Shown in pieces: positions 5,541 to 43,333 of a stretch of DNA of 51,827 nucleotides. The notes under the pieces were generated by a model, which was given only the letters and a program-made list of their open reading frames with translations, had not been told where the DNA came from and made no database searches. The position numbers and the translations under genes were made by a program. Source of the stretch: Obrimoposthia wandeli (lineage: Eukaryota); assembly GCA_977020255.1 (NCBI GenBank), contig CDROCS010001208.1, positions 1-51,827 of the forward strand. The letters are read 5' to 3'. Numbering within the stretch: position 1 is the first letter of the stretch; each line of letters starts with the position of its first letter.

Positions 5541-6005
5541 ATCACTACTCATTACATCGACATAGTTTGTATTTCTCAAGGTTTTTATTTGTTTGAAATG
5601 TAATTAAGAAGTATTTTGATATCCCGTGATGGTACAAAGAAATTTAATGCACATTAACTGATTTGGATGAGCATGTTATCGAAATATAGTTTTTTGTTAT
5701 AACTCTTTTTAAATATCATTTGCTAATTTAACACTCAGAAAAAAACACACAAATCAAAAAATTTAAGCTGCATTATATGGTTTTTATATTTTTAAATGCG
5801 TTACAATTGGTATTATACAATGTTTTTGTTTCTGTTTTAATATGCATAACAGAGATGCAACCAGCTGGTACTGGCCGATAAATTACTCCTTTTTTTAAAT
5901 ATTCAATTTCTTTTAGTAGTATTTGAAAAAATAGTTTAGATTTTTATTTGAAAAAATCATTTTATTGAAGCATTAACAATATGTTATTTTACTTACGTTA
6001 TTTCC

Positions 6006-7345
6006 TCTTCGTATCCGGTATATAGCCCTTTTGGCACATTTTATCATGATCTCAAAGACCTCTCCAAAATGTGGTACATGTGGTGGGTTGAAGACCCAAC
6101 GTATCTCCTCCTTTACTAACTCCTTTTGAATCTGATAACCGTCCCGTATCAATTCGCTCACTTCATTCACCGCCCCTACAAAATTTGTGCCATTATCCGA
6201 GATTATCATTTGTGGTCTCCCTCTTCTTCCTAAAAATTATTTTAATGCCCTAATAAACCCATCGATATCCAAACCATAAGCCATCTCTAAATGAATGGCC
6301 TGCGTTTGTAAGTATGTAAAAGGCAAAGGTATATCTTAGTCCTCACTATTCCACGTCCTTCCTTTGTGATGAATGGTCCTGCAAAATCCACTCCGACGTT
6401 TGCAAAGGCCCTTAACGGTATTTCGAATCTGAATGCCGGCAAGGAAGCCATCTCTTTGACCATCCCTGCGACTTTACCTTTATTGCAGTCGAAGCATTCT
6501 CGCTCTATTTCTTTGATTACTCTTTGTACTTTAGGAATCCAATATTTATTTTGGCTCTCATTCGGTATATTCTGTACTCTGGCGTAATGCCGTAACCTCT
6601 CGTGTGTATCCTTTATGATTAATCTAGTCAGCCAACTCTTTTCTGATAACAAAATGAGATATTTTGTGTCATTATCTAAAAACTCCGCATTCATAATTTG
6701 GGTATTGGCTCTGATTATTTCTATTTCATCAACCCACGGTTTCAACTTTAGTAATGAGCTTGTTATCTCAATCTCTTTCTTCTTTATTAACCGTTGGTAT
6801 TCCTTGCAGAAATACTGAATTTGTTCATGCTTTATCAACAACTGCATCCCTTTTTCCACTTCATCCATTTTCAGCTCGCCTACAAGTCTGCGATTTTGAG
6901 GTAACTTTATATTTCGTGCAAATCTTAGTATCCCAGCTAAGACTCTCTTCAATCTCGTTAAGTCGGAATAAGTCTCTATTTTCAATCTTCCTGTATGAAC
7001 ATTGTTACTTCCTTGTACCGTTTCTTTTTCTTTTAATCTGACTGTATTTCTTCTAAGTCTAAATTATCAATCGCATCGTCACTTTGCCTGCGTATTCATT
7101 ACGCATGTATACTACTGCGCCATACCTTAAAGTTATCTGCGTTTACTTGGGTTACGATTTGAGCCATTAACGGCGAAGCATTTATTCCAAAGACTACTTT
7201 CTGAAATCCATACATATCCCTCAGGTTCTCTCTATTTTTCCCTAAAAACCTTAGCCATGGGCGGTCTTCCTTACATACCTTCATATGTAAATACATCTTT
7301 GAAATGTCACACACTAACGCTATTACATTCCTTCAAATTCCCTAA
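6006..7345 (-). mobile_element. BEL/Pao LTR-retrotransposon pol fragment (RT piece plus integrase), truncated at 6006
   Basis: CDISKMYLHM..DRPWLRFL..VFGINASP (BEL RT), then THERLRH..CFDC, VGVDFAGPF, SDNGTNFVGA, and PHFGEVFE. Confidence 0.88.
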
Positions 7346-7863
7346 CAGAGAGACCCAAGCACTACATAGGAACTAAAAAGAAATAAAATTTGTTTTTGGA
7401 AATTAAATTCAATAATTTTACTGGACATCCTCCTACGAAGAATACTACAGATAATTATTTTTATTTTTGTGTTAGGTTCATGTATTCATGTGTTAAAATA
7501 TTGAAGTTTTAATTTATGTAACTCTCAGAATATTTAGCCCCCTGGTCATTTTTATTTGTATGTATTAAAATTAAATTACAATTTTTGTATTTAATAGAGC
7601 CCAACATATACTAGAGATATGAAATTAATTGATAATAAAATATTTCATTTTATAGAATATAATTAGATTAAAAATATTGGATATGCTTCTTTGTACTTTC
7701 TTCATTTAAAAAATGTGCGTGTTTAATATCTTTATATTCAAAGTCATTTAAGTTTACTTTTACTTCGAACTACAGACTTGATTAATTTATTCACTTTTTA
7801 TCTTACTGATTCTTTTTCTTGATCTCTTATGCTTTACTTTTTCTTTGCATTTACGTTTTACTA

Positions 7864-8510
7864 TCAACTTCTTAAAATGCAATGCAAATTATTTTTTTCT
7901 TTTTGTTTATAAACAGTTACTCCCTTAGAATTAAATATATATGTTAAAACACGTAAATCATATAAGCAGGCTTGTGTAAATTCAATAAATATATATCCAT
8001 GTGCTTGTTTATCAGCATCATGGAATGAATGAACTAGAAAGTTTTTATTTTGGGTAAAAGCTTGTCTGGCCACGAAATCTACAACTGTTTGATCTCTCGA
8101 ATTTTTAAATAATACTAAGTAATGTATATTAAAATATCTTGATCTATGATGACATCCTTGATGAAAAAGATTTTGAGTGATAAATATATCTGTTACTTCA
8201 CGATGTCTTGCAATCTTTGTAAATAAATTATTAAAGTTCGATTCCTTGTTAGCTTCTTGATACTAATCATCAATAATTAATATATTTTATTTCTTCAATC
8301 TTTCGCACAAGTCGTATCAAATCCTTCAATAAATATTATTACCTTCAACTTGCAAACTTCTGTTTGGTCTATCCCACTTTCCCCTCTTCCACCATGATAC
8401 TAAAAAAATATTTTTAAAACTGGAATTGAAAATAGTTTCATTTTGTAACAATTTCCTGGGATCCACTTTCCACTGGGATCAACTATTTGAAATACGGTAT
8501 TTTTATTCAT
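7864..8510 (-). pseudogene. Second Polinton A32-like ATPase remnant
   Basis: MNKNTVFQIVDPSG (degenerate Walker A), LIIDD*YQEANKESNFNNLFTKIARHREVTDIFITQNLFHQG, YLVLFKNSRDQ, and AHGYIFIEFTQ. Confidence 0.82.
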
Positions 8511-8559
8511 CTTCTTTACATCTAGACTTTCATATAACAATTTATTTTCAATATTCGAT

Positions 8560-9040
8560 TCAACAGCGTATTGATAATCCAAATTTATCAATCTCAAAAT
8601 CATAAGTTTCCCACTGAAAAATATATTTACACATAGCGGTGTAAACGTCAAATATCTGAGTGCAGGAAACTTTTCAGGTTCAAACATGCATCGTTCTTTC
8701 ATTTTCTCTGTAATTTTATAAAGATTTATTGGTTTCCCAAGATTTTATGAAACTATGATTGATTGTTTGGCGCCGATTTGAATTCCAAAGAGTAAATTGA
8801 TCTAATTCAATGGTGTTTTGCATCCCATAACACGACAACTTCCTAAAAAATTCAATATGAAAATAAAATAAAAACTAACTTGAGGGAAGCAAACCAACTG
8901 TTTCGATACTGAGAAGACCCACTCTTCTCAACGAGACATTAAACAATGAGGAAGTATAATATACTGGTATATACGGATTGGCATAAAATGATTCTTCATA
9001 ACTTGTTAAGCTTATATTGCTCCAAATACTTTTTAGTATT
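8560..9040 (-). pseudogene. Second TBP-like remnant with a 37-nt intron (8843-8879)
   Basis: TVG(L/I)(L/F)PS, intron, SCRVMGCK, QSIIVS, NLGKPINLYK, and MFEPEKFPALRYLTFTPLCVNIFFSGKLMILRL. In-frame stops are present. Confidence 0.65.
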
Positions 9041-9205
9041 CAGAAACGAAAAACTAAATTCATTTCAATAAAATTCTTTCAACAATTGAGGATATTTATA
9101 AATTTATTTTCAACCAATACATTATTACAAAAAAATATTTAGATACAATTGAATTTTCTGAACAGATAATACATAATTTTAATACAAAATTTATCAAATC
9201 ATAGA

Positions 9206-10075
9206 ATGGATTCATGTATCATTTGTACTGGAGAGCTAGAGGATGATGAAGTTTGTGTGACTGAGTGCAGACACTATTTCCACACCGAGTGTCTCAAGGT
9301 ATGGATGCTAGTCAACTGTAGCTGTCCATTTGAACGAAATGAATTGCAGTACATCTTCATTTGTCAAAATGGCACTGAGAGCCGAGTTAGAGTGGCCACA
9401 CTTCTGCGGAAAGAATGGGAAGGATTGTGCAGAGAGATTGTGGAGGATACGAAAGCGAAGTGTTCGGTCTTGTATGAGGTGCTGACGACCCAGATGGTGC
9501 TGACCCATGAATTTCTAGAATTAGCTGCACAACAACGGGATCACGGACCGACACTGGAAAAGTGGTTCCATTGTCTTTCGTATTTGTGCAACACTATGCA
9601 AAGCTTCGAGGATGAGTTCACAGAAAACTTCATCAAGGTCCTGGAAACAGAACAGAACTCAGAAGGCTCTGACAGTCTGGAGTCGTCTTTGAATTGCATG
9701 AAAGATGTGCAAGAACAGCTGTTATCTCTTGTACACATCTGCAGCGTGTTAGGAGCCATAGGTGGCGATTTGGACCGGGTCCGATCTTTGTGTCAAGATT
9801 TAGAACTACTGGTCGACATCACACGGGAAGGTGTACTCGATCTCAAGATCTACTTCCTCACGACGAAGCTGCCAACTCAGCTGAGAGGTAACATGAAAAT
9901 AGTGCTTTTTGGAATAGCTTCAATGCAGCATTGTGCCATGTGCCGAGAAGAAATCGTTGATGTTGAGCGACTCCACGAGAGCCCCAAGACCTTAGGTATT
10001 TGTGGTCACAGGATCTGTCACAACTGTACCCTAGAATTACACGAGTTGGACATATTTTGTCCACATGAAAATTGA
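9206..10075 (+). CDS. Intronless 289-aa double-RING protein, putative E3 ubiquitin ligase (copy 1)
   Basis: N-terminal RING-H2-like set C4/C7/C21/H23/H26/C29/C40/E43, C-terminal RING-HC-like set C243/C246/C266/H268/C271/C274/C285/E288, and an acidic, probably helical middle. ATG-to-TGA intact, with AATAAA at 10113-10118. Confidence 0.85.
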   Translation: MDSCIICTGELEDDEVCVTECRHYFHTECLKVWMLVNCSCPFERNELQYIFICQNGTESRVRVATLLRKEWEGLCREIVEDTKAKCSVLYEVLTTQMVLTHEFLELAAQQRDHGPTLEKWFHCLSYLCNTMQSFEDEFTENFIKVLETEQNSEGSDSLESSLNCMKDVQEQLLSLVHICSVLGAIGGDLDRVRSLCQDLELLVDITREGVLDLKIYFLTTKLPTQLRGNMKIVLFGIASMQHCAMCREEIVDVERLHESPKTLGICGHRICHNCTLELHELDIFCPHEN

Positions 10076-10266
10076 ATTCTTTTGACAAGTACCAAAAAGG
10101 CTTTGTTTTTTTAATAAATTTAGTAATCTTTCTAAAATTACTTTTAATATTATTAAATTGAACAAAGGCAGTTATTTATTTTAATATAACATTATAAATA
10201 ACATGCTTTTAATTTTTTTATTAACAATATATTTAACAATATTTACACTTCAAACCTTTAACTAAC

Positions 10267-10393
10267 CATGTAGTACAGTTGGCGTCCACAAAATGTAAGA
10301 ATACAGGTTGATTTAATCCACTCAATGATGCTGGAGGGGATTTGAGTGTTTTATTTTACACTGCAATAAAAGCCGTTACAATATTTGTTCTAT
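10267..10393 (-). pseudogene. Orphan 127-nt exon resembling the GAIN/GPS region of an adhesion GPCR (other copies at 23254-23380 +, 29147-29273 -, 42147-42273 +)
   Basis: TTTCAG acceptor and GTTAGT donor. Encodes RTNIVTAFIAV*NKTLKSPPASLSGLNQPVFLHFVDANCTT(W), with one in-frame TAA. Confidence 0.45.
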
Positions 10394-10829
10394 CTGAAAT
10401 ACAAATGAATAAAACATTAGGAAAGTGAGAACTTACTAACTATTCATTTTTTATATTTAATACTTGATATATATTTAATGTTAAAAATAAACTATCTTAT
10501 TTAAACTTTTTAGATTTTTTTATTAAATTTTAAATCTAGTGAGGATACAAGTTAAGGGTTATGGAATACTGGCGGGTAATTTTAATACTTTTACCATTTT
10601 TTAATTAATTTTTATTATATTTGAATTTTTATTATTGAAATATTAATTAACTAAATTTTAATTAATTAAAATTTTATAATACATATCCGTTTAATAATAT
10701 AATTTTATTTAAATACACAAATTAATATATTTTATATTTTTACTAAAAATAATGTTAAATAATCAAACATTACCGATAAAACTTTTTCTAAAGTGGGAAA
10801 ATAATGAAAAATTATAAAAACCTAAATAT

Positions 10830-11015
10830 AAATAGAGAATAAGATTGGATCAAGTAACGAACACCGGGCAAACACTGCATTTTAAGTATTCAGGGTCTGA
10901 AACAGTATCATCAAATTTTAACAGATAGTTTCCGCTAAATAAAATCCCTTTTAAACCAATTAAGCTCTCCACAATTCAAATGCGGCAGATAGATCAAAAA
11001 GTATTATTAGTACTC
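10830..11015 (-). mobile_element. Non-LTR retrotransposon (CR1/L2-like) RT fragment (other copies at about 22630-22815, 29725-29895, 41525-41710)
   Basis: ILFDLSAAF and SLLDPILFSIY, matching LDLSAAFD and GSVLGPxLFxxY. Confidence 0.6.
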
Positions 11016-11283
11016 ATTTTTCATAGTTTAAATATTTTAATACATTTTATACTAAACAATGCCATTTTAGTTCAATGATAACTTCTATAAGCTGTTTGGC
11101 AAATACATAAACACATTCTTTTTTAAGTAAATGATGAATGGTGTCAGAACTTATTTTTCAAGAACTTTCAATAGACATTAAAAGTTTAAATTGTATTTAC
11201 AAATTGATAGATTGGCTTTGTGCGCACACCAAAACATAATACCGAAAATGATTGCATAATCCCGCAAGGATGACCTGTCACAC

Positions 11284-11599
11284 CACAAGGGTATGGCTAA
11301 GATAGGTTATGAAACTTTGAAGGTATGATTGTGACCTTATATAGTTGACCAACACACTTAGAGGGTTATGGACGTCTATAGATGAAAACCCAGGTTCAGT
11401 TATAACTTGAAGATTTAGAGATAAAGCTGAGGTCAACTATGGTTGGCCATCACATCTAAAGGATTGTGGTCGTCCGTAAATGAAGTGGTCGGACTAAAGG
11501 CCAAATCAAGTTTCAAATATGAAGGTTTGAGTATATGGTTGGGATAATCTTCATCCTTCCACCTACTAAAAGAGACAATAGAAATAACAAATTGCACAC
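11284..11599. repeat. Degenerate, internally repetitive dispersed element (mirror at about 40942-41257), related to 16900-17030
   Basis: Recurrent TATGGTTGGCCA, ATAGATGAAA and TTATAACTTGA motifs shared with the reverse complement of 16900-17030. Confidence 0.5.
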
Positions 11600-12074
11600 T
11601 ATTAGCATTACAAAGACGATTAACTTTATATCAAACGTCTCGATGGTTTCACTTATTTCTGTCAGTGAATGAGATGTCAATTCCAGTCAACTATAATAGT
11701 AAATAAAAACATGTCTGTTATCAGTAAATACCAAATATTTATTGAAGGTGACTACTGAATTTTTGTCGTTTTTTTCTTAGTTTAAAACTTTAACGAAATA
11801 TAGAAATCAATACCATAAATAACTAAAATATAAAGAATTTGTTACATACATCATTTTTCTGTTATTTTAATAACTTAGCAGTGCATATAACGTCTTTGAA
11901 ATGACTTTTTCCACATATCATCTTGGTTTTTTTGGAACAGTGTATACAATGGTGCAGCCTTTTGACAGGTAATGCATAAAAAAGATTAAAATTCTAGGTA
12001 GTGTACTAAAAAAATTTAAATTGCAAAAGTTATAACTTAATCTTAAAAAATACCAAAAACCGTAATATCTAATC

Positions 12075-12620
12075 TAGCTTCATCTCAGACCCTCTTCAAG
12101 TTCTGGCAGGTAGATGCTGTTGGCAGAGGGATAGCAGTGTCCCAAGCCCTGGCCAAATTTTACCTGGTGCTTAATGGAGCCGGTTCTGTCTCCTGCAGAC
12201 ATCGTTGACTGTGAGGCGGACTAATCTCGATTGGAGAGACTGGTATCCTCTCGAACAAAATTGGCCCGTAGTCCACTGGAAATGGGAGAATCTCCTGATG
12301 ACCTGATGGCCTTCCTCTTCCACGAAGCTTTCTTCAGTTTCTCCTTCTCATGCTGAAGCTGACGTGAGACCGCATCCTGCTGCCCTCGCGAATCTGGAAG
12401 CATTGTCGGTTCCGGATTCTCCAGTTCTGCAGGCAATTCGTCCAATCCAGCTTCATCCCAGTCCATGATCAATCACTGCTTCTCTAGAATTGAACATTGC
12501 GGTGATACACTTTTGGAGCGCTTCGTTTTCTGCACATCTGCTCGCTTTACCCGTTTCCGCGAGAAAGGAGAAATTTATCGCCAAGTCTCCTCAGTTACCT
12601 TTGAAGGACCATGCAATAAA
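12075..12620 (-). pseudogene. GC-rich decayed ORF of unknown family (mirror at about 39920-40465 +)
   Basis: Sharp compositional island with partial frames, for example MDWDEAGLDELPAELENPEP..HEKEKLKKASWKRK. Several stops and frameshifts. Confidence 0.3.
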
Positions 12621-13499
12621 GAATTGTTAAATATTATAAAATATTTAGATAAAAAATATTATTAAATATATTAAAATTTTCCTCAATAATAGGATAAGGA
12701 AGTTTATTTTAATGTTCCATTAATGTCTCCGTAGAATGTAGAATATTGGTTTTCGACTTTCTAATGCGTTTGGTCTCTCTTCTATGAGTGTTGCAGGTTA
12801 CTGCAAAAGAACATCAATAACATTTGACATGTATAGATTTTTTTCACTCCACACACATGCACGGTATTAAATGACAGTGGTAGCCCTCCGGCGATAGGAG
12901 GATGGCGTGAATTAGACCGGACATATCCACCTACTCATGAGCAGACATATAATATCTATGAAATTATTGTGCTTTCAATTGAAGGTCACATAAGCATAGA
13001 TTATCATAAGTAGACAAGTGTAGACAATTTATCGTATAAGACACTGAAAGAGCTTTAAATCATAAGCCACTAACAACTTTATTGATTTAAATTCAACTTT
13101 AAAAAATACTCCAATAATTATAATCATAATTATTTAGGCATATCACCAGGATTTCAAACTCATAATCCATGGAATGGATTATTATAATTCTATAACAAAA
13201 ATAATAATAAACTTATCATTATTACCACTACACATTATCATCCCACCATCACCCACCATCACCACTATCATCATCACAATTACCACATATTTTGGTCTCA
13301 TTAAAAAATCAATACAACCAATCCTTACTTTCATTATTTAGCATTGGCCAAGTTAGGTGTGCATAACCATTAAATTTACCAAATCAATAAAACCAAGGCT
13401 TACTTTTATTATTCAACATTGGCCAAGTTTATATTTGTGAGTACCTTATTTCCGTGTCATTTAATTTTCGTGAGACATAAATAATAAGTTGATTATCTT

Positions 13500-13900
13500 G
13501 TAATAGAACAGCACCGAGCCCATAGTCACTGGCATCTGTTCTAAGTTTCACTTTAACTCATTATTAAATATTTTCAAAGGGTTTATAATTGATAATTCAT
13601 GTTTCAATTTTATAAACTGAGATTCATGGCTGTCTTTCCATACATAAACATCTTTCTTCATAATATCCCATAAATCTCCAACTAATTCCGAATAGCCTTT
13701 AGATAACTTCTGACCCACATATCCTGCTAAGTCTAAAACACTTCTAAATTCATTGTGATTCTTTGGTGTTGGATATGCTTTCAATTTATCACATCTATCT
13801 TTCGTAGGTCTCAATCCGTCGGCACGTAACATATCTCCTAAACATTTAACTGTTCTTTTACATTATTCACCAAACACCACATATTTCCTACTCTCTTTAT
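13500..13900 (-). mobile_element. Ty3/Gypsy RT-RNase H junction fragment (mirror at about 38640-39040 +)
   Basis: LKAYPTPKNHNEFRSVLDLAGY..VWKDSHESQFIKLKHEL, then RTDASDYGLGAVLLQ. Confidence 0.8.
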
Positions 13901-15089
13901 TTAATAAAATCTGGTGATAATCTTTTTTGGCATCCAGAACAAAAATATTTTTCACCACTATCATCATTACATTTACCACAGAAATCTAGGAACTACAATT
14001 TTAATTACTAATCTTGTAGTGTATAATAATGTATATTTTCTAGGCCTTCAAAAGGGTAGAGAAAGTCTTTCTTGGCTATTTATTAAAAAAAATTGAAGAA
14101 TGACAAATTTAAGAAAACATTTGACATATTGGGAAAAATTTATAATCGAAAAAAAAACAATATCAGAAAACCCTTAAAATATTTCCTACAAAAATTGAAT
14201 GTTAAAAATTCTAGTTTAGTGCAATTATCAATGTTGTGTGTTTGTTCGAATAAGCAGAATGGAATAATTGTAGTGTAGCAAAATTTTGTAATAATTATTT
14301 CGTGAGTTTTCGTAAATAACAATATAATTTACTTAAAAATGTATTTTCAGCTTTATAATTTTCTTCACTTATTTCTTTAAGTTTTTTGGTTTAAGTCTCT
14401 GGAAAAATTAGTTAATACAATTCCGAGTATCCCGTTGACAAGAACTGCATTATCTTCTAAACTTTTAATCATATTGGTATACATATTCTGAAAGACCTCT
14501 TGTGATAATAAAAAATCTTTATAATTTAATGCATCTCACAACAAATATGTTTAACATGTCCTTAAATTTCACTCGACCAACTAACTTGTGATCACCTCCC
14601 AGATCATATTGCTATACTCCCCATACTGAAGCCACTGATTTATTTCACTAAAACCTTATATCATGTACTCTTAATGTTAAATAAATATTTTTTAAAAATA
14701 GTATATAAATAACAAATAATTTTTTGGTCAGCTTAAAATGCTTATTATCAGTAAAACACTATTTTCTCCATATATCTTCTGGTTAATCTGTGTATTAATC
14801 CTTTTCAACAATGATTCTTTTGTCAATATAAAATAGTACGTGAATTAATTTGTTAGATATTGTCTACTTTGTAATAAAAGACAATTAAATAATTGATAAA
14901 AACGACAATTATATTCTCAATGTTTAGTTTAATACTATTTATAAACTTTATTGTATTTCTTTATTATAGTTTTAATTACTAGATAATTGAACAGTTTTCA
15001 AACCTAATACTTTCTTTGTAGTTTGTTATCTAGCGCAATTAGCGTAATATCCATCTCATTGTCAAGAACTTCAACATTTGAATTTAGAA

Positions 15090-15345
15090 AAATGTCACAA
15101 TAAAATACAACAATATTATGGGTATAAATATCGTTAAGACATGTATTATATTTGTTATATCTCCGAATTCAATAAATTCAAAACTCTATGTTTCCAAAAT
15201 TATATCAACTCCAATCGTTTTGTTTCCCAATGAAATTGTTATAACTCAAAATGCGATAAATTCAACAACAAAAATCAAAATGCAATTTTTTATTTCCAAT
15301 ACGGTTCTGTAAATTGTCAAAGCAATGATAATAATTATTATAGTT
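15090..15345 (-). pseudogene. Possible decayed multi-pass membrane (GPCR-like) exon fragment (mirror at about 37195-37450)
   Basis: Hydrophobic frame IIIIALTIYRTVLEIKNCILIFVVEFIAF*..IIHVLTIFIPIILLYF. Family not secure. Confidence 0.25.
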
Positions 15346-15759
15346 GTTTGTGTCACGAATCCAAAAATATGTTGCTATTTATAGCAACTGATCACCTGCA
15401 TACAGTCAGCAGTAAATGCTCAGTTAACAGAGTGCAAAAGGCAGAGATAAGGAGATATCGATTTGTGCTGTAACTGTTTTTGGAGACACACAAACATGCA
15501 GAAGACTGCCGCTGTTGAAAGAAGAGAAAACAGGACTGCATCCGATGAAGGCGGTCTGGACAGCGGAGGTTGCCGAGCGATGAAGATGTGGAAGAAGGTC
15601 CGGAGTTCTGCTTCCCGCGCCAAGGCAGATCGCGGTAGTGGAGGTGGTTCTGTGAAACCTGAACGACTTTGTGCAGGTAAGTGTTTTTCTTCTAATCTGT
15701 TTTTCTTTTTTATCTCTGACTTCGCTGGCATTTTGCCCACCGCGAAGCTAGAGATAAAT

Positions 15760-15813
15760 CTGCCGTCCCCCCGACGAGCCGGCAGGGCGAAACCGGTTAA
15801 GCCGGTCAGGGAC
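15760..15813 (+). ncRNA. Type I hammerhead ribozyme-like motif with a U4C core variant
   Basis: Stem I GTCCC(C)/(A)GGGAC; core CCGACGA; stem II GCC-GGCAG-GGC; GAAA; stem III ACCGG-TTAAG-CCGGT; GTC cleavage triplet at 15805-15807. The 5' tail CTGCC is complementary to loop II GGCAG. Confidence 0.68.
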
Positions 15814-16269
15814 TGAAGGAAAACAAAAATGCCAAAGTGCATCTATATAACCCCTCCAATCGCCCCTCAATTAAGGGAACAATTAATTAACTTTTCCACT
15901 AATTAACCCATCATAAATAACTCAATTTTTTCATTCCCAACATATTTGTCCATATTGTTCAACTACAGAACTGGATAATTATAAGAATTTTATAGAAAAC
16001 ATTATTTAATAAGCATTTATAAGTAGAAAAAGATTTTTAAATTCAATTCCGACTATAGCTTTAAATTATGATTTGACTCCAATCGCAGTTCCGGCTTCGA
16101 CAATGAAAGTTGCTCATCTAGATCTTATTGATTTAAAAATTCCGAATAATCTTCTATTTAAAGTAGCAGAAATAATGAATAATATGGGCAATGCAAAAAT
16201 TCAATACATTATACGGATGAAATTAAAAAAGGAGAACGGTCTCATAAGGCGGTCATATTTATTTATGAA

Positions 16270-16790
16270 AAATGCCTGAAATCGAAGAAACTATGGATAA
16301 GAGAGTTGAAGAATATTCCGAAAATGAAGTGGATGGAAATTAATAAAAGTTTTAGACTATGTATTTGTCATAACGAAATATAGTGAAAGATCTGCATTAT
16401 CTGGACATTCAAACATTCCAACACCAAAATCGTTATAAAAAAGTAAAGCTATTGTAAGTTTTCAAAACAATGACAATCTGTGTTTTATTTATGTAATTCT
16501 GGCTGTTTTGAAACATGGTGAGATTACTAATCATACAACTCTTGTATGAAAGTATTCACCAGTTTTGAAAGATTTGATGTTTGACGAAACAGATATGCCA
16601 ATGAAGATTTCAAATATATTAAAGTTTGAGACAAAGAATCCGAATATAAGGATTAATGTACTTTTATACAATGATGCCGTCATCGAAGAAAAATATGTTT
16701 ATGTTATAAAAATTCCTACATATACATTGCATATAAATCAAAGAAAAAGGTAGGAAATATTGTTAATTTGATACTGTTGGAGAATATATC
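16270..16790 (+). pseudogene. Polinton protein-primed DNA polymerase B N-terminal-region fragment (mirror at about 35750-36270 -)
   Basis: SGWKLIKVLD, KSKAIVSFQNNDNLCFIYVILAVL, and MPMKISNILKFETKNPNIRINVLLY..IVNLILL, matching the GSGW..KKAIINVKNxDNKCF..FPVxLxDIxKFEKxN..INV pattern. Confidence 0.7.
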
Positions 16791-17619
16791 AGAGAATATT
16801 GGAGAAAAATATCCCAGTAAAATTTAAAGTTCAGATTTAAATAAATTTTAAAAATTAAGATGACATCAAATATAACTTCAAGTCGTAACTGATCCCTACC
16901 CCTTCATATATAGACGACCTCAACCCCTTGGATATGTTGGCCAACCATACCTTCAAACCGTCAAGTTATAATTGAGCCAGACTCTTTCATCTATGGATGA
17001 AAAAAACCCCATATCTGATTATCCTGGCTTGTTTTGATAATAAACTAATTAAAATGGTTTGTTTTAAAAACATCGCTAAATACAGTTTAAAGCACAAGTT
17101 TAGTAACTGTTGATATAATTACCAACTAACAACCAATGTTACTCAAATTAAACTAATATTAAAAGTGATATACACCTGTGTTCTACTTCATTATTAGCAT
17201 GGGGTCACTGCGACCACTTCATGATAATGTATCATTTTATGTAATTAATTTTTCAAGTACAAGTACGATTGCATACATATATATATATATATATATATAA
17301 AAATATTCTAAAATTATTATTTTCTTTAAAATTATAATAAAAAAAATTATAAAGTGTTAAATTAATTACAATAATTAAATATACAAAAATTTAATACAAA
17401 TAACTATTACTGGCTCACATTTGAAAACCTTCTTCTGTTGTGGGATTTTTAAAGTTTATATATATGATTCGAACATGCTGAATTCCAAATTAATATTTAT
17501 TTACCTCTATCAGATCATGTTTACTCTATGGATCGTTCTTCAGTCTAATTTTATCCCAAAATATATTTTCATTTTTAACTCGAACTATGTTAAAATATTC
17601 TTCAAAAACATCTAAAACT

Positions 17620-18250
17620 TATATGCCTATCGTGATTTCTGTGAAAATTATGGTGCCTCCGCTTCCATTGTCCGCTGACTCGGCCTTCGTTGGTGTACGA
17701 ATTACCACAAGCGGATGTGCTTTAAATAGTATTATCTTGTTTATTAATTGTAAAATTGCATCCAGATCTTGGTCTTCTCCCCATCTTATCACTCTAAACA
17801 TTTAAATTTCATCCAATAAACCTCTTTAATTTCTTTCCTTCCATCGTATCTTTCTTCTAGCAATCTTAAAGCTTTATCGTAACTTGCATCCGTGAACCTC
17901 CATCAGCTGCAGCATTATTTTCTTGCCTTGGTGCATCGGTCTGATCGATGACAGTATCAAATATTGCCCGCCTACTCTCATAATATTTATAATCACCAAA
18001 GAAGTATGGAATACTAATCTTTTTCCGACCCTTTAAAAAGTTTCTGTCTGACTTCTTTTTATCTATTGACTTCTTCTTTCACATAGCTTGACTCTTCTTT
18101 GGTTCTAGTTTCAAATTCTCTTTCTATCTTTGCAATGTCACTTTTTATTTCCATTATCTCGAGTTGTTCTTTTACTCCAGCGCCTGCTCCAATTCCTTAT
18201 TATTTTGTTCACCAAATCTTCGTACGATATCTCTATACTCTTTTCTTTAA
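17620..18250 (-). mobile_element. BEL/Pao gag (DUF1759-like) remnant (mirror at about 34282-34912 +)
   Basis: KISIPYFFGDYKYYESRRAIFDTVIDQTDAP, SYDKALRLLEERYDG, and EI*MFRVIRWGEDQDL, preceded by a lysine/glutamate-rich coiled-coil-like stretch. Confidence 0.65.
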
Positions 18251-19149
18251 TCTGTATCTTCTCTAGTGTTACATGAATCTGACCACTCTTCTCCTGCTAG
18301 TATTATATCCAACTTAGTTATATTCTTCTCATGTTCCATGTCATCTTTCAATTTTGGTGTTACCCTGACGTTTGCACCGCTCTTAATAACGTCGTCTGGT
18401 CTTATGCATTTCCCTTCCGATTCCAACCAGTACTCCCAGAGTATCTTACCTTTCCACGTATATCCTTCCAACTACACCTCTCCATGTACTCAATCACACG
18501 GATATTTTTGCTCTATATTAAAAAACACGACTTGAGGTTAGGCTTAATGAAGGTATTTACTTTTACCTTTTTATCTTTATTCCCTAAAATATTGGTTGCA
18601 GAAAATGTACTATTTAAATTAGTCAATTGGGGAAAATGAGGAAAACGAGCTTCCGCAAGCTTTTCTACTAACACCCTTTCTTCCAAAGAGCAATGACTAA
18701 AAGACACTCTTGTCTCTCTAGTTCCTAAAAATATTCCGGGATTTGTATAAATAGTATCTATATTATACCGGTGACATATTCTAGTAGTGCTTATAACATC
18801 ATAATTTACCTTATCACTGAATCTGTCTAAAATTTGACCTATTCTAGTAGCGCTTATAATCGCGTCATTTACTTTATCGCCTAATGCTACCGTAAATCTT
18901 CAAAATGTTTCATTATTTACAATAACTGTTACAATTGACTTAATTCTACCCGATCAAATGAGAGAGAATTAATTAAAATATTTGTTAGTAAAAATTACTT
19001 AATTATTTTTTAAAAATATATATATATATGCAAAAATTATTTACATTGTCCTCTTTTGCTGCCTCTCCTTCAGTTTGATCTAAATCTTCGATTCTAGGTT
19101 TCTCCTTCTCCTCCGCTCTCTTCTCTTTCTCTACATACACTTTAATGGG

Positions 19150-21290
19150 ATACCATAGAGGCTCACTATCATCTATTTTCACAGCACTAGACTCTCACAA
19201 ATATTATTCCTCGTCATTATCTGCAACCAAATATGCCGAGTAAAATCCAACCCGCATTTTCCTGTTTTAGTAGACACTTTTGTCTTAACCATCATATATC
19301 TTAATGTGTGTATAACTCTTTCTTCCAGACCGTTACTTTGATTAAGAGCTGTATTGAACATACCAAATTTTCGTCGCTAATTCTGAAAATAATTTCCAGT
19401 AAATATTCGTCCTATATCTATTAAAATGCTTTTAGGTTTCCCAAATGTATATATTCAATTTGTCTATGAGTTCTTTAGTAATTGTTATTTCATCTTATTT
19501 TGTAGTTATTAATAGTAATACCAGTTTACTAAATCGATCGATTACTATCGACATATATTTCTTTTTAGATCATCCTTCCTTCATGTGGGCTGTATCGACA
19601 AGCATTTGATCTAAAAATTCAACTTATTTATTTTATTTTTTGAATTATTCTTTCCAAAATAAAATTATATTTCATATATTTATAAACCTTATGCATTCCT
19701 AGATGACAAAGATATTGATAAATGTTATTAATAATTTCATAAGCGTTTTCGTAGGTATGACTATTAAATCTGTAAAATTATGTTCAAAATAAAAGATATC
19801 ATCGCAGAGTTTAAGTGTTTCTTTTATCTGCTAAATCCAATTTATTTTGCATTCTTCTGATAAATCTATACTTTATAATTAAATGCACACTTTCATTTCT
19901 TTCACATGAATATATTCTTGTTGTATTTTTCTTATCTTACTGAAGAAGTTGTCTTCATTTAGTGAGTGAATATATTGTATTTTAGATATCTTCTCTTGTG
20001 CATATATATGTTTAGTTTTGCACTGAGTGCAGTCGGTTTCATTCAATCTTAACAAGCCATCGGCAATACCATGGTCAATACCTTTACGATGTTCTAACTT
20101 AAAATTAAATTTTGATAAACTTTCAGTAATATTTGAAATTGAGGACTGATTGAAATTTTTGTTGTTCTTAAAAACACTTACGATTTATGATATGTTCTTT
20201 CCAAAAATTCTGTTCCATATAAATATTGTTTGAAATACATATTAAATTAGTATTCTTCTAAAAGTTCCTTTCTGGTAACACAATATTCTTTCTCATGAAA
20301 AGTCAAATGTTTTGAAGCATATGCAATCACTTTTTTGTTTCTCATTTCATTCAGTTGGCACAATATTGCCCCAAATCGCACCAAAACTGGCATCTGTTAA
20401 AATTATAAATGTTTTATTTCACCTGGAAAAGTCTAGTATGATTGCCTTGTGACATAGTGGGACTGCAATATTGGCATAAACTTTTATAAATCGTCGATAA
20501 TAGTTTGTCATTCCTAAGTATGATCATAGTTTCCCTTACAGTCGGGTTCTTTGAAATTTATAATTTCGTTGACTTTAGACTGATTTATATGTATTTAGCT
20601 TTGTGTTATCGTATGACCTATGGCTTTTAACAGTTTCTGATCATTGTAGCGTTTATTAGGGTTTATATTGAGACCTGCAGCTGCAATTCTTTTGAATGCT
20701 TCCCTTAATAATTTATAATGTTCTTCTTGGTTGTTACTATAGACAAGGATATCATCCAGATATACAATTTTTCTTCTGAACAGCAATCCATTAGAATTTC
20801 TATGTATGATTCTGGAATGTGGCAGGTCCTGTAGCCAACCCAAATGGCCACCAACTGAAATAAAATTGTCTCAGTTTTGTACTGAGAGTCGATTTTGTCT
20901 GAGATTCTTTCTCTAGATCTACCTGGTAATAAGCTTGTCCAATATCTAGTGTCGTAAATATTTTTTCATCACCTATACAATCGAACAAGAGTTGTGCATC
21001 TTGTATTGAAAATGTAAACTTCTTGGTTACATCATATAATTGGCTGTAGTCAACACACATTCGATTTGTATTGTCTGGTTTCTTTACAATGACCAATGAA
21101 GGTTCGAATGACTTTCATCCTTTCATCAAATTGGATTTCTAATTGCATTGCTTGTCGTCTAGGATTTTGAAAAATTGGATCAGCAATAGTCTCAATCTTA
21201 TGAGAGACAATTTTGGTATATCCTCAATCAAATTTAGAACATATACATATTTTTCCAAACTCCTCAATATAATGTCCTAGAATTTAGTAT
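19150..21290 (-). mobile_element. Ty3/Gypsy pol pseudogene (RT, RNase H, integrase)
   Basis: VIVKKPDNTNRMCVDY, FTTLDIGQAYYQV, PFGLATGPATFQ, YLDDILVYS, LTDASF, VIAYASKHL, HRKGIDHGIADGL, VIDRFSK, and NQSNGLEER. Confidence 0.9.
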
Positions 21291-23586: not shown

Positions 23587-24456
23587 TCAATTTTCATGTG
23601 GACAAAATATGTCCAACTCGTGTAATTCTAGGGTGCAGTTGTGACAGATCCTGTGGCCACAAATACCTAAGGTCTTGGGGCTCTCGTGGAGTCGCTCAAC
23701 ATCAACGATTTCTTCTCGGCACATGGCACAATGCTGCATTGAAGCTCTTCCAAAAAGCACTATTTTCATGTTACCTCTCAGCTGAGTTGGCAGCTTCGTC
23801 GTGAGGAAGTAGATCTTGAGATCGACTACACCTTCCCGTGTGATGTCGACCAGTAGTTCTAAATCTTGACACAAAGATCGGACCCGGTCCAAATCGCCAC
23901 CTATGGCCCCTAACACGCTGCAGATGTGTACAAGAGATAACAGCTGTTCTTGCACATCTTTCATGCAATTCAAAGACGACTCCAGACTGTCAGAGCCTTC
24001 TGAGTTCTGTTCTGTTTCCAGGACCTTGATGAAGTTTTCTGTGAACTCATCCTCGAAGCTTTGCATAGTGTTGCACAAATACGAAAGACAATGGAACCAC
24101 TTTTCCAGTGTCGGTCCGTGATCCCGTTGTTGTGCAGCTAATTCTAGAAATTCATGGGTCAGCACCATCTGGGTCGTCAGCACCTCATACAAGACCGAAC
24201 ACTTCGCTTTTGTATCCTCCACAATCTCTCTGCACAATCCTTCCCATTCTTTCCGCAGAAGTGTGGCCACTCTAACTCGGCTCTCAGTGCCATTTTGACA
24301 AATGAAGATGTACTGCAATTCATTTCGTTCAAATGGACAGCTACAGTTGACTAGCATCCATACCTTGAGACACTCGATGTGGAAATAGTGTCTGCACTCA
24401 GTCACACAAACTTCACCATCCTCTAGCTCTCCAGTACAAATGATACATGAATCCAT
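23587..24456 (-). CDS. Double-RING protein (copy 2)
   Basis: Intact 289 aa. Differs from copy 1 by D14G, T27I, L211V and I237R. Confidence 0.85.
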   Translation of the reverse strand: MDSCIICTGELEDGEVCVTECRHYFHIECLKVWMLVNCSCPFERNELQYIFICQNGTESRVRVATLLRKEWEGLCREIVEDTKAKCSVLYEVLTTQMVLTHEFLELAAQQRDHGPTLEKWFHCLSYLCNTMQSFEDEFTENFIKVLETEQNSEGSDSLESSLNCMKDVQEQLLSLVHICSVLGAIGGDLDRVRSLCQDLELLVDITREGVVDLKIYFLTTKLPTQLRGNMKIVLFGRASMQHCAMCREEIVDVERLHESPKTLGICGHRICHNCTLELHELDIFCPHEN

Positions 24457-24622
24457 TCTATGATTTGATAAATTTTGTATTAAAATTATGTATTATCTGT
24501 TCGGAAAATTCAATTGTATCTAAATATTTTTTTGTAATAATGTATTGGTTGAAAATAAATCTATAAATATCCTCAATTGTCGAAGGAATTTTATTGAAAT
24601 GAATTTATTTTTTCGTTTCTGA

Positions 24623-25090
24623 ATGCTAAAAAGTATTTGGAGAAATATAAGCTTAACAAGTTATGAAGAATCATTTTATGCCAATCCGTATATACCAGTT
24701 TATTATACTTCCTCATTGTTTAATGTCTCGTTGAGAAGAGTGGGTCTTCTCAGTATCAAAACAGTTGGTATATTTCCCTCAAGTTAGTTTTTATTATGGG
24801 ATGCAAAACACCATTTAATGAGATCAATTTACTCTTTGGAATTCAAATCTGCACCAAACAATCAATCATAGTTTCATAAAATCTTGGGAAACCAATAAAT
24901 CTTTATAAAATTACAGAGAAAATGATAGAACGATGCATGTTTGAACCTGAAAAGTTTCCTGCACTCAGATATTTGACGTTTTCACCGATATGTGTAAATA
25001 TATTTTCCAGTGGGAAACTTATGATTTTGAGATTGATAAATTTGGATTATCAATAGGCTGTTGAATCGAATATTGAAAATAAATGATTAT
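24623..25090 (+). pseudogene. TBP-like remnant, inner copy with the intron acceptor deleted
   Basis: GTTAGTTTTTATTATGGGATGC: the acceptor and the SCRV codons are missing. A truncated mirror copy lies at 27598-27919 (-). Confidence 0.6.
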
Positions 25091-25113
25091 ATGAAAGTCT
25101 ATATGTAAAGAAG

Positions 25114-25744
25114 ATGAATAAAAATACCGTATTTCAAATAGTTGATCCCAGTGGAAAGTGGATCCCAGGAAATTGTTACAAAATGAAACTATTTCCAATT
25201 CCAGTTTTAAAAATATTTTTTAGTATCATGGTGGAGGAGGGGAAAGTAGAATAGACCAAACAGAAGTTTGCAAGTTGAAGGTAATAATATTTATTGAAGG
25301 ATTTGATACGACTTGTGCGAAAGATTGAAGAAATAAAATATATTAATTATTGATGATTAGTATCAAGAAGCTAACAAGGAATCGGACTTTAATAATTTAT
25401 TTACAAAGATTGCAAGACATCGTGAAGTAACAGATATATTTATCACTCAAAATCTTTTTCATCAAGGATGTCATCATAGATCAAGATATTTTAATATACA
25501 TTACTTAGTATTATTTAAAAATTCGAGAGATCAAACAGTTGTAGATTTCGTGGCCAGACAAGCTTTTACCCAAAATAAAAACTTTCTAGTTCATTCATTC
25601 CATGATGCTGATAAACAAGCACATGGATATATATTTATTGAATTTACACAAGCCTGCTTATATGATTTACGTGTTTTAACATATATATTTAATTCTAAGG
25701 GAGTAACTGTTTATAAACAAAAAGAAAAAAATTATAAAAAATAA
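25114..25744 (+). pseudogene. Polinton ATPase remnant, inner copy within the palindrome spacer
   Basis: Same motifs as 7864-8510. Confidence 0.8.
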
Positions 25745-28085: not shown

Positions 28086-28955
28086 ATGGATTCATGTATC
28101 ATTTGTACTGGAGAGCTAGAGGATGGTGAAGTTTGTGTGACTGAGTGCAGACACTATTTCCACATCGAGTGTCTCAAGGTATGGATGCTAGTCAACTGTA
28201 GCTGTCCATTTGAACGAAATGAATTGCAGTACATCTTCATTTGTCAAAATGGCACTGAGAGCCGAGTTAGAGTGGCCACACTTCTGCGGAAAGAATGGGA
28301 AGGATTGTGCAGAGAGATTGTGGAGGATACAAAAGCGAAGTGTTCGGTCTTGTATGAGGTGCTGACGACCCAGATGGTGCTGACCCATGAATTTCTAGAA
28401 TTAGCTGCACAACAACGGGATCACGGACCGACACTGGAAAAGTGGTTCCATTGTCTTTCGTATTTGTGCAACACTATGCAAAGCTTCGAGGATGAGTTCA
28501 CAGAAAACTTCATCAAGGTCCTGGAAACAGAACAGAATTCAGAAGGCTCTGACAGTCTGGAGTCGTCTTTGAATTGCATGAAAGATGTGCAAGAACAGCT
28601 GTTATCTCTTGTACACATCTGCAGCGTGTTAGGGGCCATAGGTGGCGATTTGGACCGGGTCCGATCTTTGTGTCAAGATTTAGAACTACTGGTCGACATC
28701 ACACGGGAAGGTGTAGTCGATCTCAAGATCTACTTCCTCACGACGAAGCTGCCAACTCAGCTGAGAGGTAACATGAAAATAGTGCTTTTTGGAATAGCTT
28801 CAATGCAGCATTGTGCCATGTGCCGAGAAGAAATCGTTGATGTTGAGCGACTCCACGAGAGCCCCAAGACCTTAGGTATTTGTGGTCACAGGATCTGTCA
28901 CAACTGCACCCTAGAATTACACGAGTTGGACATATTTTGTCCACATGAAAATTGA
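28086..28955 (+). CDS. Double-RING protein (copy 3)
   Basis: Intact 289 aa. Differs from copy 1 by D14G, T27I and L211V. Confidence 0.85.
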   Translation: MDSCIICTGELEDGEVCVTECRHYFHIECLKVWMLVNCSCPFERNELQYIFICQNGTESRVRVATLLRKEWEGLCREIVEDTKAKCSVLYEVLTTQMVLTHEFLELAAQQRDHGPTLEKWFHCLSYLCNTMQSFEDEFTENFIKVLETEQNSEGSDSLESSLNCMKDVQEQLLSLVHICSVLGAIGGDLDRVRSLCQDLELLVDITREGVVDLKIYFLTTKLPTQLRGNMKIVLFGIASMQHCAMCREEIVDVERLHESPKTLGICGHRICHNCTLELHELDIFCPHEN

Positions 28956-42464: not shown

Positions 42465-43333
42465 TCAATTTTCATGTGGACAAAATATGTCCAACTCGTG
42501 TAATTCTAGGGTACAGTTGTGACAGATCCTGTGACCACAAATACCTAAGGTCTTGGGGCTCTCGTGGAGTCGCTCAACATCAACGATTTCTTCTCGGCAC
42601 ATGGCACAATGCTGCATTGAAGCTATTCCAAAAAGCACTATTTTCATGTTACCTCTCAGCTGAGTTGGCAGCTTCGTCGTGAGGAAGTAGATCTTGAGAT
42701 CGAGTACACCTTCCCGTGTGATGTCGACCAGTAGTTCTAAATCTTGACACAAAGATCGGACCCGGTCCAAATCGCTACCTATGGCTCCTAACACGCTGCA
42801 GATGTGTACAAGAGATAACAGCTGTTCTTGCACATCTTTCATGCAATTCAAAGACGACTCCAGACTGTCAGAGCCTTCTGAGTTCTGTTCTGTTTCCAGG
42901 ACCTTGATGAAGTTTTCTGTGAACTCATCCTCGAAGCTTTGCATAGTGTTGCACAAATACGAAAGACAATGGAACCACTTTTCCAGTGTCGGTCCGTGAT
43001 CCCGTTGTTGTGCAGCTAATTCTAGAAATTCATGGGTCAGCACCATCTGGGTCGTCAGCACCTCATACAAGACCGAACACTTCGCTTTCGTATCCTCCAC
43101 AATCTCTCTGCACAATCCTTCCCATTCTTTCCGCAGAAGTGTGGCCACTCTAACTCGGTCTCAGTGCCATTTTGACAAATGAAGATGTACTGCAATTCAT
43201 TTCGTTCAAATGGACAGCTACAGTTGACTAGCATCCATACCTTGAGACACTCGGTGTGGAAATAGTGTCTGCACTCAGTCACACAAACTTCATCATCCTC
43301 TAGCTCTCCAGTACAAATGATACATGAATCCAT
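42465..43333 (-). pseudogene. Double-RING protein (copy 4), frameshifted
   Basis: A 1-nt deletion near 43158 (AACTCGGTCTCAG vs AACTCGGCTCTCAG) splits it into 92-aa and 227-aa ORFs. It also has G187S. A sequencing error cannot be excluded. Confidence 0.75.

What the first reader, a model, noticed from the sequence alone, without database searches (positions are those of the whole stretch)
9206..10075. Intact, amplified, intronless double-RING protein with Glu at the eighth ligand position of both fingers
Seen: the only long intact ORF in about 52 kb of decayed elements, GC-richer than its flanks, with AATAAA 38 nt after the stop. Both RINGs end in CPxE (CPFER, CPHEN). I count 7-8 substitutions in 870 bp between outer and inner copies, about half synonymous, versus 7 in about 205 bp just upstream. 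Known: an acidic eighth ligand (Asp) occurs in PHRF1/SCAF11-, Roquin- and TRAF6-type RINGs, and viral RING E3s such as ICP0 counter host defences. Inference: a functional, possibly undescribed RING-helical-RING E3 family whose dosage was raised by the palindrome. Caveat: the 3' flank is also very similar between copies, so gene conversion could explain the conservation.
Basis: partly seen in the sequence, partly recalled or inferred. Interest (0 to 1): 0.78.

Follow-up and report, generated by a model that had tools for sequence, protein, structure and literature searches.

The report
Orphan double-RING ubiquitin-ligase gene family
The open reading frame is a real, intron-free gene from a family of at least about 130 genes in this probably flatworm genome; each protein has a ubiquitin-ligase RING finger, a four-helix bundle and a second RING-like finger, and almost nothing like it is in public protein collections.

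Summary
The sequence facts hold. A 289-codon ORF stands at 9206-10075. Two more intact copies are in the window, and a fourth lacks one base in codon 59. The ORF has 45% G+C against 22-28% in the flanks, and AATAAA lies 37 nt after the stop.

The gene is not an isolated novelty amplified by the palindrome. It belongs to a small, divergent clade (10 loci on 4 contigs, 7 intact) of a family with at least 129 full-length, intron-free paralogs in this genome.

AlphaFold2 models both the window protein and a main-clade paralog with confidence (pTM 0.80 and 0.83). Both show an N-terminal RING-H2, a beta-hairpin, four long helices and a C-terminal RING-like finger.

All zinc ligands of finger 1 are invariant across the family, as are the residues at the usual E2-contact positions (Ile6, Trp33, Pro41, Arg44). 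The exception is ligand 8. It is Cys in the big clade, Asp in the deep lineages and outside relatives, and Glu only in this clade. In finger 2 the eighth ligand could be His287 or Glu288.

Selection is purifying on RING1 (omega about 0.25) and relaxed on helices 2-4 (0.73-0.79). The recent copies are too young for a firm test (p=0.07).

Public protein searches gave only three unnamed full-length relatives.

The parts
9206..10075 (+). Copy A: intact 289-codon intron-free gene (stop included)
   Evidence: AlphaFold2 pLDDT 87, pTM 0.80
9215..9337 (+). Finger 1, RING-H2 (residues 4-44): C4 C7 C21 H23 H26 C29 C40 and E43 in place of the eighth ligand; I6, W33, P41 and R44 sit at the usual E2-contact positions
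   Evidence: Pfam zf-RING_2 40.9 bits against a cut-off of 27.3; invariant columns; aligned to the RNF4 and Arkadia RINGs
9350..9391 (+). Beta-hairpin (residues 49-62) after finger 1
   Evidence: DSSP on the models
9392..9862 (+). Four long antiparallel helices (residues 63-108, 114-151, 156-186, 189-219); the fastest-evolving part of the family
   Evidence: only generic bundle matches, Z 11-12.6; omega 0.40 for helix 1 and 0.73-0.79 for helices 2-4
9932..10069 (+). Finger 2, RING-HC-like (residues 243-288): C243 C246 C266 H268 C271 C274 C285, then H287 or E288
   Evidence: invariant columns; weak profile match to the TRIM32 RING, E=1.3e-4; second stretch in the Pfam RING models
10113..10118 (+). 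AATAAA 37 nt after the stop, a possible polyadenylation signal
   Evidence: kept in 7 copies, but the hexamer is common here
8867..11283 (+). Core segment shared by all near-identical copies (gene plus about 340 nt upstream and 1.2 kb downstream)
23587..24456 (-). Copy B, intact (4 amino-acid differences from A)
28086..28955 (+). Copy C, intact (3 amino-acid differences from A)
42465..43333 (-). Copy D: one base missing in codon 59, so the frame breaks; otherwise closest to copy A

Best explanation
The ORF is a functional gene of a large, lineage-restricted, intron-free family of single-chain double-RING proteins that most likely act as E3 ubiquitin ligases.

Shown: the family exists, with at least 129 full-length paralogs. 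The fold is predicted with confidence as an N-terminal RING-H2, a beta-hairpin, a four-helix bundle and a C-terminal RING-like finger. The zinc ligands and the Ile, Trp, Pro and Arg at the usual E2-contact positions of finger 1 are invariant across paralogs that share only 20-30% identity. Finger 1 is under the strongest purifying selection, while helices 2-4 and finger 2 change fast.

Inferred: finger 1 recruits a ubiquitin-charged E2. Arg44 would then act as the 'linchpin' that primes ubiquitin transfer. The variable helical bundle together with finger 2 would select the target, so that gene duplication yields a repertoire of specificities.

The Glu at position 43 is a derived replacement of the last zinc ligand. 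On the quick tree the most parsimonious order is Asp first, then Glu in this clade and Cys in the large clade. It probably still closes the second zinc site through its carboxylate, as Asp does in Rbx1 and TRAF6. The four copies in the window come from recent segmental, partly inverted duplication, with exchange between copies.
For: - Coding signal: 289 open codons where about 4e-6 are expected; G+C 45% against 22-28% in the flanks.
- Family size: at least 129 six-frame matches at E<1e-75 to the family profile, nearly all uninterrupted and clustered in arrays and inverted pairs.
- Conservation: invariant C4 C7 C21 H23 H26 C29 W33 C40 P41 R44 and C243 C246 C266 C271 C274 C285 in 41 paralogs. 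These hold when three outside relatives are added, except H26, which drops to 90% or more.
- RING identity: Pfam zf-RING_2 above its cut-off. The profile matches the RNF4, Arkadia, RNF165 and RNF38 RINGs at E 1e-8 to 1e-16, with the CPxCR end aligned.
- Fold: pLDDT 87 and pTM 0.80 for the window protein; 86 and 0.83 for a main-clade paralog with the same order of elements.
- Selection across the family: omega 0.22-0.28 for RING1, 0.73-0.79 for helices 2-4, 0.5-0.57 for RING2.
- Ligand 8 on the tree: the Cys clade (support 99) and the Glu clade (100) each form a single group. The Asp lineages are deep and include the outside relatives.
- Recent copies: 14 synonymous to 21 non-synonymous changes, no indel in 7 coding sequences against many in the downstream flank, and the upstream flank more diverged than the coding sequence in 18 of 21 pairs. 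Similarity is mosaic: L001/L006 differ by 0.25% downstream but 2.7% upstream.
Against:
- No biochemical evidence.
- Within the Glu clade the excess of synonymous change is not significant (p=0.07 with ts/tv 3.4), and 3 of 10 loci are broken.
- Glu is an unusual ligand for a structural zinc site, so the second zinc site of finger 1 may be weakened or lost.
- The crude site-by-site test found no significant positive selection, so 'specificity repertoire' is inference.
- I had no model coordinates, so the relative position of the two fingers is unknown.
Confidence: 0.6

Rival explanations
1. The genes are cargo of mobile elements, such as giant Gypsy-type retroelements or Polintons. They would be amplified by transposition rather than as host genes, and might act for the element against host defences.
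For: - The window is full of decayed retroelement pieces, such as the integrase-like ORF at 6287-6985.
- Earlier notes of this scan describe small RING genes as cargo of giant Gypsy elements in this genome; I did not check them.
- One main-clade paralog has an integrase fragment 600 nt downstream.
- Near-identical copies lie on four contigs.
Against: - The shared segment has different ends at different loci: 8451-13952, 8801-11763, 7333-11283 and a 10-kb collinear stretch. That fits segmental duplication, not an element with fixed termini.
- 9 of 10 flanking ORFs next to main-clade paralogs have no Pfam match.
- No viral protein shares more than the RING fold.
Confidence: 0.12
2. The window's clade is a young, decaying branch. 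Its frames are open only because the copies are recent and homogenised by gene conversion, and Glu43 is a damaging change in a ligase on its way out.
For: - Copies differ by 2% or less.
- The synonymous excess is not significant (p=0.07), and the chance of seeing no stop in 35 neutral changes is 0.23.
- 3 of 10 loci are broken.
- Similarity is mosaic.
- RING1 scores lower in Pfam than in paralogs: 40.9 against 57 bits.
Against: - The clade sits on a long branch (about 25% identity to all others) yet keeps every other zinc ligand, W33, P41 and R44, and a confidently predicted fold. It was therefore under constraint after it split off.
- There are no indels in seven coding sequences, against many in the downstream flank.
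- An old copy at 87% nucleotide identity carries 10 stops, so unconstrained copies do decay.
Confidence: 0.13
3. Part of the 'amplification' is an assembly effect: the two arms of the 51.8-kb contig, or contigs C1208 and C1661, are the same locus assembled twice as haplotigs or a fold-back.
For: - The window is the whole contig C1208 and is one palindrome.
- The arms are 99.5% alike, with 28 indels among the differences.
- C1661 is 98.7-99.4% identical over 20 kb.
- The one-base gap in copy D could be a sequencing error.
Against: - The palindrome has a 2.65-kb asymmetric spacer and a 2.8-kb insertion in one arm only, which a fold-back read would not give.
- The arms differ by 47 substitutions.
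- The inner inverted gene pair recurs on C1661 with the same 14.4-kb spacing.
- This rival does not touch the existence of the gene or its family.
Confidence: 0.3

Closest known systems
Small RING-H2 E3 ligases of the Arkadia/RNF165, RNF38 and RNF4 type
   Same: Finger 1 has the same ligand spacing, the same Ile, Trp and Pro at the E2-contact positions, and an Arg directly after the last ligand. The profile matches their solved RINGs at E 1e-8 to 1e-16.
   Different: Here the RING sits at the very N-terminus. It is followed by a four-helix bundle and a second finger, and the last ligand is Glu in this clade. There is no similarity outside the RING.
Rbx1/ROC1 and TRAF6 RINGs with Asp as the last zinc ligand (established knowledge; Pfam zf-rbx1)
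   Same: The deep lineages of the family end in CP[LMV]DR, as Rbx1 ends in CPLD. The three of these paralogs scanned pass the zf-rbx1 cut-off.
   Different: The window protein has Glu, not Asp, and scores 25.5 bits against a cut-off of 31. It has room neither for Rbx1's cullin-binding N-terminal strand nor for the insertion that holds Rbx1's third zinc.
Plant ATL family and teleost finTRIM (large, fast-diversifying RING E3 families; PMC5133618, PMC2657112; only the titles and abstracts listed were read)
   Same: These are large lineage-specific expansions of RING ligases. ATL genes are largely intron-free and carry a RING-H2 (general knowledge). finTRIM genes were diversified by duplication and positive selection (abstract).
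   Different: The architecture differs: ATL has an N-terminal membrane helix and TRIM has a B-box, a coiled coil and B30.2. There is no sequence relationship beyond the RING. Positive selection is not shown here.
RBR ligases (RING1-IBR-RING2)
   Same: Two RING-like fingers in one chain.
   Different: The part between the fingers is helical and binds no zinc, and no IBR hit was found. Finger 2 keeps a RING-HC ligand pattern rather than the RBR RING2 pattern.

Membership tests
RING-H2 finger (Pfam PF13639 zf-RING_2) | Score above Pfam's gathering cut-off | tested here: met
   40.9 bits against 27.3, residues 2-42; paralogs score 43-57 bits
RING-H2 finger (Pfam PF13639 zf-RING_2) | Eight zinc ligands C3H2C3 with canonical spacing | tested here: not met
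   Seven ligands are present. Position 8 is Glu43, where 49 sampled paralogs have Cys and 11 sequences (8 paralogs, 3 outside relatives) have Asp. Whether Glu binds zinc cannot be tested here.
RING-H2 finger (Pfam PF13639 zf-RING_2) | E2-contact residues (Ile after ligand 1, Trp after ligand 6, Pro after ligand 7, Arg after ligand 8) | tested here: met
   W33, P41 and R44 are invariant and I6 is kept in 90% or more of the family. They align to the same positions in RNF4 and Arkadia.
RING-type E3 ubiquitin ligase (functional class) | E2-dependent ubiquitin transfer | not testable with these tools
   Needs an in vitro ubiquitination assay.
RBR ligases | IBR zinc domain between two RINGs | tested here: not met
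   No IBR hit in Pfam. Residues 63-219 are four helices.
TRIM/RBCC | B-box and coiled coil after the RING | tested here: not met
   No B-box hit. The helical part is a compact antiparallel bundle in the model.
Rbx1/ROC (Pfam PF12678 zf-rbx1) | Score above the gathering cut-off | tested here: not met
   25.5 bits against 31 for the window protein. Three Asp-type paralogs pass at 35-39 bits.
Plant ATL | N-terminal membrane helix and GLD motif before the RING-H2 | tested here: not met
   The RING starts at residue 4, which leaves no room for either.
The unnamed double-RING family of this genome (defined here) | RING-H2 at residues about 4-48, a beta-hairpin, four long helices and a C-terminal C3HC3 finger ending the protein; a single exon of about 290-320 codons | tested here: met
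   Full-length alignment to 40 paralogs, with all 17 invariant columns kept. Same predicted architecture as a main-clade member.

The most novel reading that the evidence does not exclude
The family is a flatworm-restricted, fast-diversifying repertoire of single-chain double-RING ubiquitin ligases. In this reading the conserved N-terminal RING is the catalytic module. The variable helical bundle plus second finger recognises changing targets such as retroelement or viral proteins, which would make it a functional counterpart of vertebrate TRIMs built on a fold not described before. It would also supply a natural Cys/Asp/Glu series at the last zinc ligand of a RING.
Probability: 0.2. Interest if true: 0.7.

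Novelty: new variant of a known kind. Interest (0 to 1): 0.5.

Why it matters
RING ligases are well known. This architecture (RING-H2, hairpin, four-helix bundle, second finger, all in about 300 residues from one exon) matched no solved structure, Pfam family or named protein in the searches run here. Yet the genome holds well over a hundred copies.

Families of this size and pace usually mark a conflict, such as immunity, mobile elements or reproduction, so this one is a candidate entry point into an unexplored part of flatworm biology.

The family also offers a natural experiment on RING zinc sites. The same position holds Cys, Asp or Glu in otherwise conserved fingers. That makes it directly testable whether a Glu can serve as a structural zinc ligand in a RING.

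Tried and rejected
Searches that found nothing useful:
- Word-index searches of 5.8 billion proteins with the window protein, a main-clade paralog and the family profile found nothing beyond one sequence already in the profile.
- A profile search of 1.84 billion representatives returned mostly unrelated multi-RING proteins. Among the 150 listed, only P0068, P0080 and P0150 match full-length. Further relatives may lie below the list.
- Foldseek and VIA-align against the PDB, and Foldseek against BFVD, matched only the RING and generic helical bundles (Z 11-12.6, below the level that means anything for bundles).
- The ESM Atlas gave only low-feature-count RING clusters of giant viruses, which I treated as composition or RING-level likeness.
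- The viral contig scan gave one short RING-only match.
- Three paper searches found no description of such a family. The planarian RING/U-box screen (PMC8807557) lists 393 RING transcripts, but the passages I read give no sign of this family.

Tests that were weak:
- A crude parsimony-based site test gave no significant site.

Readings rejected:
- A retrocopy of a known host gene: every paralog found is one uninterrupted frame and no split copy was seen.
- RBR, TRIM, ATL or Rbx1 membership: see the membership test.

Full report
THE OBSERVATION

The ORF at 9206-10075 is real: 289 codons from ATG to TGA. The window holds four copies in alternating orientation.
- Three are intact: 9206 (+), 23587-24456 (-) and 28086 (+). 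They differ by 1 to 4 amino acids.
- The fourth, at 42465-43333 (-), lacks a single base in codon 59 and is otherwise nearest to the first copy.

No other long frame exists in the window apart from two mirrored integrase-like fragments.

With the window's base composition, a 289-codon open frame is expected about 4e-6 times. The ORF has 45% G+C (GC3 50%), against 28% and 22% in the flanking kilobases.

AATAAA lies 37 nt after the stop and is kept in all seven intact near-identical copies. The hexamer is frequent in this AT-rich DNA, so it adds little.

Outer and inner copies differ at 7-8 sites in 870 nt (4 synonymous). The 339 nt upstream differ at 11-12 sites and the 1.2 kb downstream at about 20.

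WHAT IT BELONGS TO

A six-frame search of the window's own assembly changed the picture (1.35 Gb, 6,912 contigs; the window is the whole of contig C1208).

Near-identical copies (10 loci, 7 intact):
- four copies on C1208, the window;
- four on C1661: two intact, one frameshifted, and one old copy at 87% nucleotide identity with 10 stops;
- one on C868;
- one on C5001.

Beyond these, more than a hundred uninterrupted frames of 290-335 codons match over the whole length at 22-30% identity. With a profile of 41 members, 129 places score E<1e-75. That is a lower bound, because only 129 of about 13,000 RING-containing candidates were scored.

Many members lie in arrays or inverted pairs. Examples are C736, C289, C393 and C840, and a head-to-head pair 1 kb apart on C986.

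No match is split into exons, so intron-free structure is a family trait rather than a sign of recent retrocopying.

ANATOMY

The alignment of 41 paralogs has 17 invariant columns:
- finger 1: C4 C7 C21 H23 H26 C29 W33 C40 P41 R44;
- the helical part: L213;
- finger 2: C243 C246 C266 C271 C274 C285. H268 is kept in 90% or more.

Finger 1 passes Pfam's zf-RING_2 cut-off (40.9 bits against 27.3). The family profile matches the solved RINGs of RNF4, Arkadia, RNF165, AMFR and RNF38 at E 1e-8 to 1e-16. In the printed RNF4 and Arkadia alignments the CPxCR ends are aligned.

In those ligases the Ile after the first Cys, the Trp, the Pro and the Arg after the last ligand contact the E2 and the donor ubiquitin. 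That is established knowledge. All four are conserved here.

AlphaFold2 gives confident models of the same architecture for two proteins. The window protein reaches pLDDT 87 and pTM 0.80. A main-clade paralog reaches 86 and 0.83. Both show a RING, a beta-hairpin, four long helices, a short helix and a C-terminal finger.

Fold searches recover only RING domains and generic antiparallel bundles such as spectrin repeats and the STAT coiled-coil domain. The Z-scores of 11-12.6 are below the level that means anything for bundles. The viral structure library matches only the RING, for example that of ICP0.

THE EIGHTH LIGANDS

In finger 1, position 43 is homologous to three different residues across the sampled sequences:
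- Cys in all 49 sampled main-clade genes (CPYCR);
- Asp in eight deep-branching paralogs (CPLDR, CPMDR, CPVDR) and in all three outside relatives;
- Glu only in the window's clade (CPFER).

On a quick maximum-likelihood tree, the Cys clade (support 99) and the Glu clade (100) each form one group. The Asp lineages are deep and paraphyletic. This was the quick tree; the careful search did not finish, and long branches make the deep order unsure.

The most parsimonious reading is Asp first, with one change to Glu and one to Cys. Asp as the last ligand is known from Rbx1 and TRAF6. Glu at this position is therefore a conservative but unusual step.

In finger 2 the picture is different. After the invariant Cys285:
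- the main clade has Cys at +2 (CPCQ);
- other lineages have His at +3, or His or Cys at +4, or nothing obvious (CPNRG);
- outside relatives have Asp or His at +3.

The window protein has His287 at +2 and Glu288 at +3, so either could be the ligand.

SELECTION

Across 366 pairs of paralogs outside the window's clade with dS 0.03-0.8, pooled pN/pS is 0.22 for RING1, 0.66 for the hairpin and helices and 0.57 for RING2.

A parsimony count on a tree of 49 main-clade genes gives omega per element:
- RING1: 0.28
- helix 1: 0.40
- helices 2-4: 0.73-0.79
- RING2: 0.50

No single site was significant. The family is therefore constrained, most strongly on the presumed catalytic finger, and fast-changing elsewhere.

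Within the window's clade there are 14 synonymous and 21 non-synonymous changes (ratio about 0.4 per site). With the observed transition bias this is p=0.07, and the absence of stops is unremarkable (p=0.23).

The better argument is that this clade lies on a long branch yet keeps every other ligand, the E2-contact residues and the fold.

The upstream flank is more diverged than the coding sequence in 18 of 21 pairs. The seven coding sequences have no indels, while the downstream flank has many. Similarity between copies is mosaic: L001 and L006 differ by 0.25% downstream and 2.7% upstream.

THE DUPLICATIONS

The large palindrome has arms at 6002-24944 and 46535-27598. They are 99.5% identical, with 47 substitutions and 28 indels. 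It has a 2.65-kb asymmetric spacer and a 2.8-kb insertion in the right arm only.

Each arm holds an inverted pair of a module of about 3.9 kb (7333-11283). Contig C1661 carries two further copies of the arm unit at about 99% identity. One has the same 14.4-kb spacing of the gene pair. In C1661 there is no second, inverted arm, and homology ends at window position about 27547, beside the junction at 27598.

The inner inverted pair is therefore independently supported. The large palindrome is plausible but rests on this one contig, and I could not lay reads. Other copies share different extents with the window, which fits segmental duplication rather than a mobile element with fixed ends.

OUTSIDE THIS GENOME

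Three word-index searches of 5.8 billion proteins found nothing beyond one sequence already in the query profile.

The profile search of 1.84 billion representatives listed mostly unrelated multi-RING proteins. Among its best 150, only three show a full-length match with the same layout plus a C-terminal extension: P0068, P0080 and P0150. All three are unnamed and come from short assembled contigs of public runs.

Three paper searches found no description of such a family.

Earlier notes of this scan call the genome planarian-like. They also report small RING genes as cargo of giant Gypsy elements. I did not verify the organism. A check of ten flanking ORFs next to main-clade paralogs found one integrase fragment and nothing else.

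MECHANISM

Shown: a confident fold, conserved zinc ligands and E2-contact residues, domain-wise constraint, and large clustered copy number.

Inferred:
- Finger 1 binds a ubiquitin-charged E2 and, through Arg44, primes transfer.
- The variable bundle and finger 2 pick the target or mediate assembly.
- Duplication and exchange between copies produce variety.
- Because four antiparallel helices bring the chain back to its starting end, the two fingers probably lie near each other. I could not measure this.

I give about 0.6 to 'functional E3-type gene of this family' and about 0.2 to the stronger reading of a defence-like recognition repertoire.

LIMITS

There is no RNA evidence, no coordinates of the models, no context for the outside relatives, and only 1.5-kb flanks for main-clade paralogs.

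Noticed in passing
window 1-51827 (whole contig C1208); C1661:4388-10000 and 38088-60999: The whole contig is a nested palindrome. Its arms are 99.5% alike, with a 2.65-kb spacer (24945-27597) and a 2.8-kb insertion in the right arm only (46536-49370, holding a 299-nt tandem duplication at 47292-47888). Contig C1661 holds two more copies of the ~20-kb arm unit in direct orientation, without the large palindrome.
   Followed up: partly
window 6287-6985 (-) and 45552-46250 (+): Mirrored 232-codon frames have an HHCC-type zinc motif and an integrase-like continuation. They look like remnants of an LTR retroelement next to the RING module. This was read by eye and not scanned.
   Followed up: no
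G000 C1661:3510-4364 (-) beside C1661:5803-6673 (+): An old, decayed copy of the gene (87% nucleotide identity, 10 stops) sits head-to-head with a frameshifted recent copy. It shows what unconstrained copies of this gene look like.
   Followed up: partly
L020:1817-2263 (+), L025 and L030 (same span), L022 and L024:1548-1994 (-): Several main-clade paralogs carry an open 149-codon frame on the strand opposite the RING gene, at the same relative place. It may be a by-product of the higher G+C of the coding region.
   Followed up: no
G000 C289:857536-910963; C736:43644-116838; C393:386468-409508; C986:449762-452394: Main-clade genes lie in regular arrays (identical copies about 22.97 kb apart on C289), in repeated inverted pairs (C736) and in a divergent pair 1 kb apart (C986). 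Inverted duplication recurs across the family and is not peculiar to this window.
   Followed up: no
about 25 nt upstream of the ATG of main-clade paralogs (e.g. L033:362-388): A conserved A-rich leader of about 25 nt (CATAAACCCAAATCACAAATT directly before the ATG) is shared by many paralogs whose coding sequences have diverged. It may be a common 5' UTR or promoter element.
   Followed up: no
L037, L039 (C2929, C850) and L065, L066 (C1371, C2337): Two Asp-type lineages have much higher G+C at third codon positions (55-57%) than the main clade (33-46%) in a genome of about 30% G+C.
   Followed up: no
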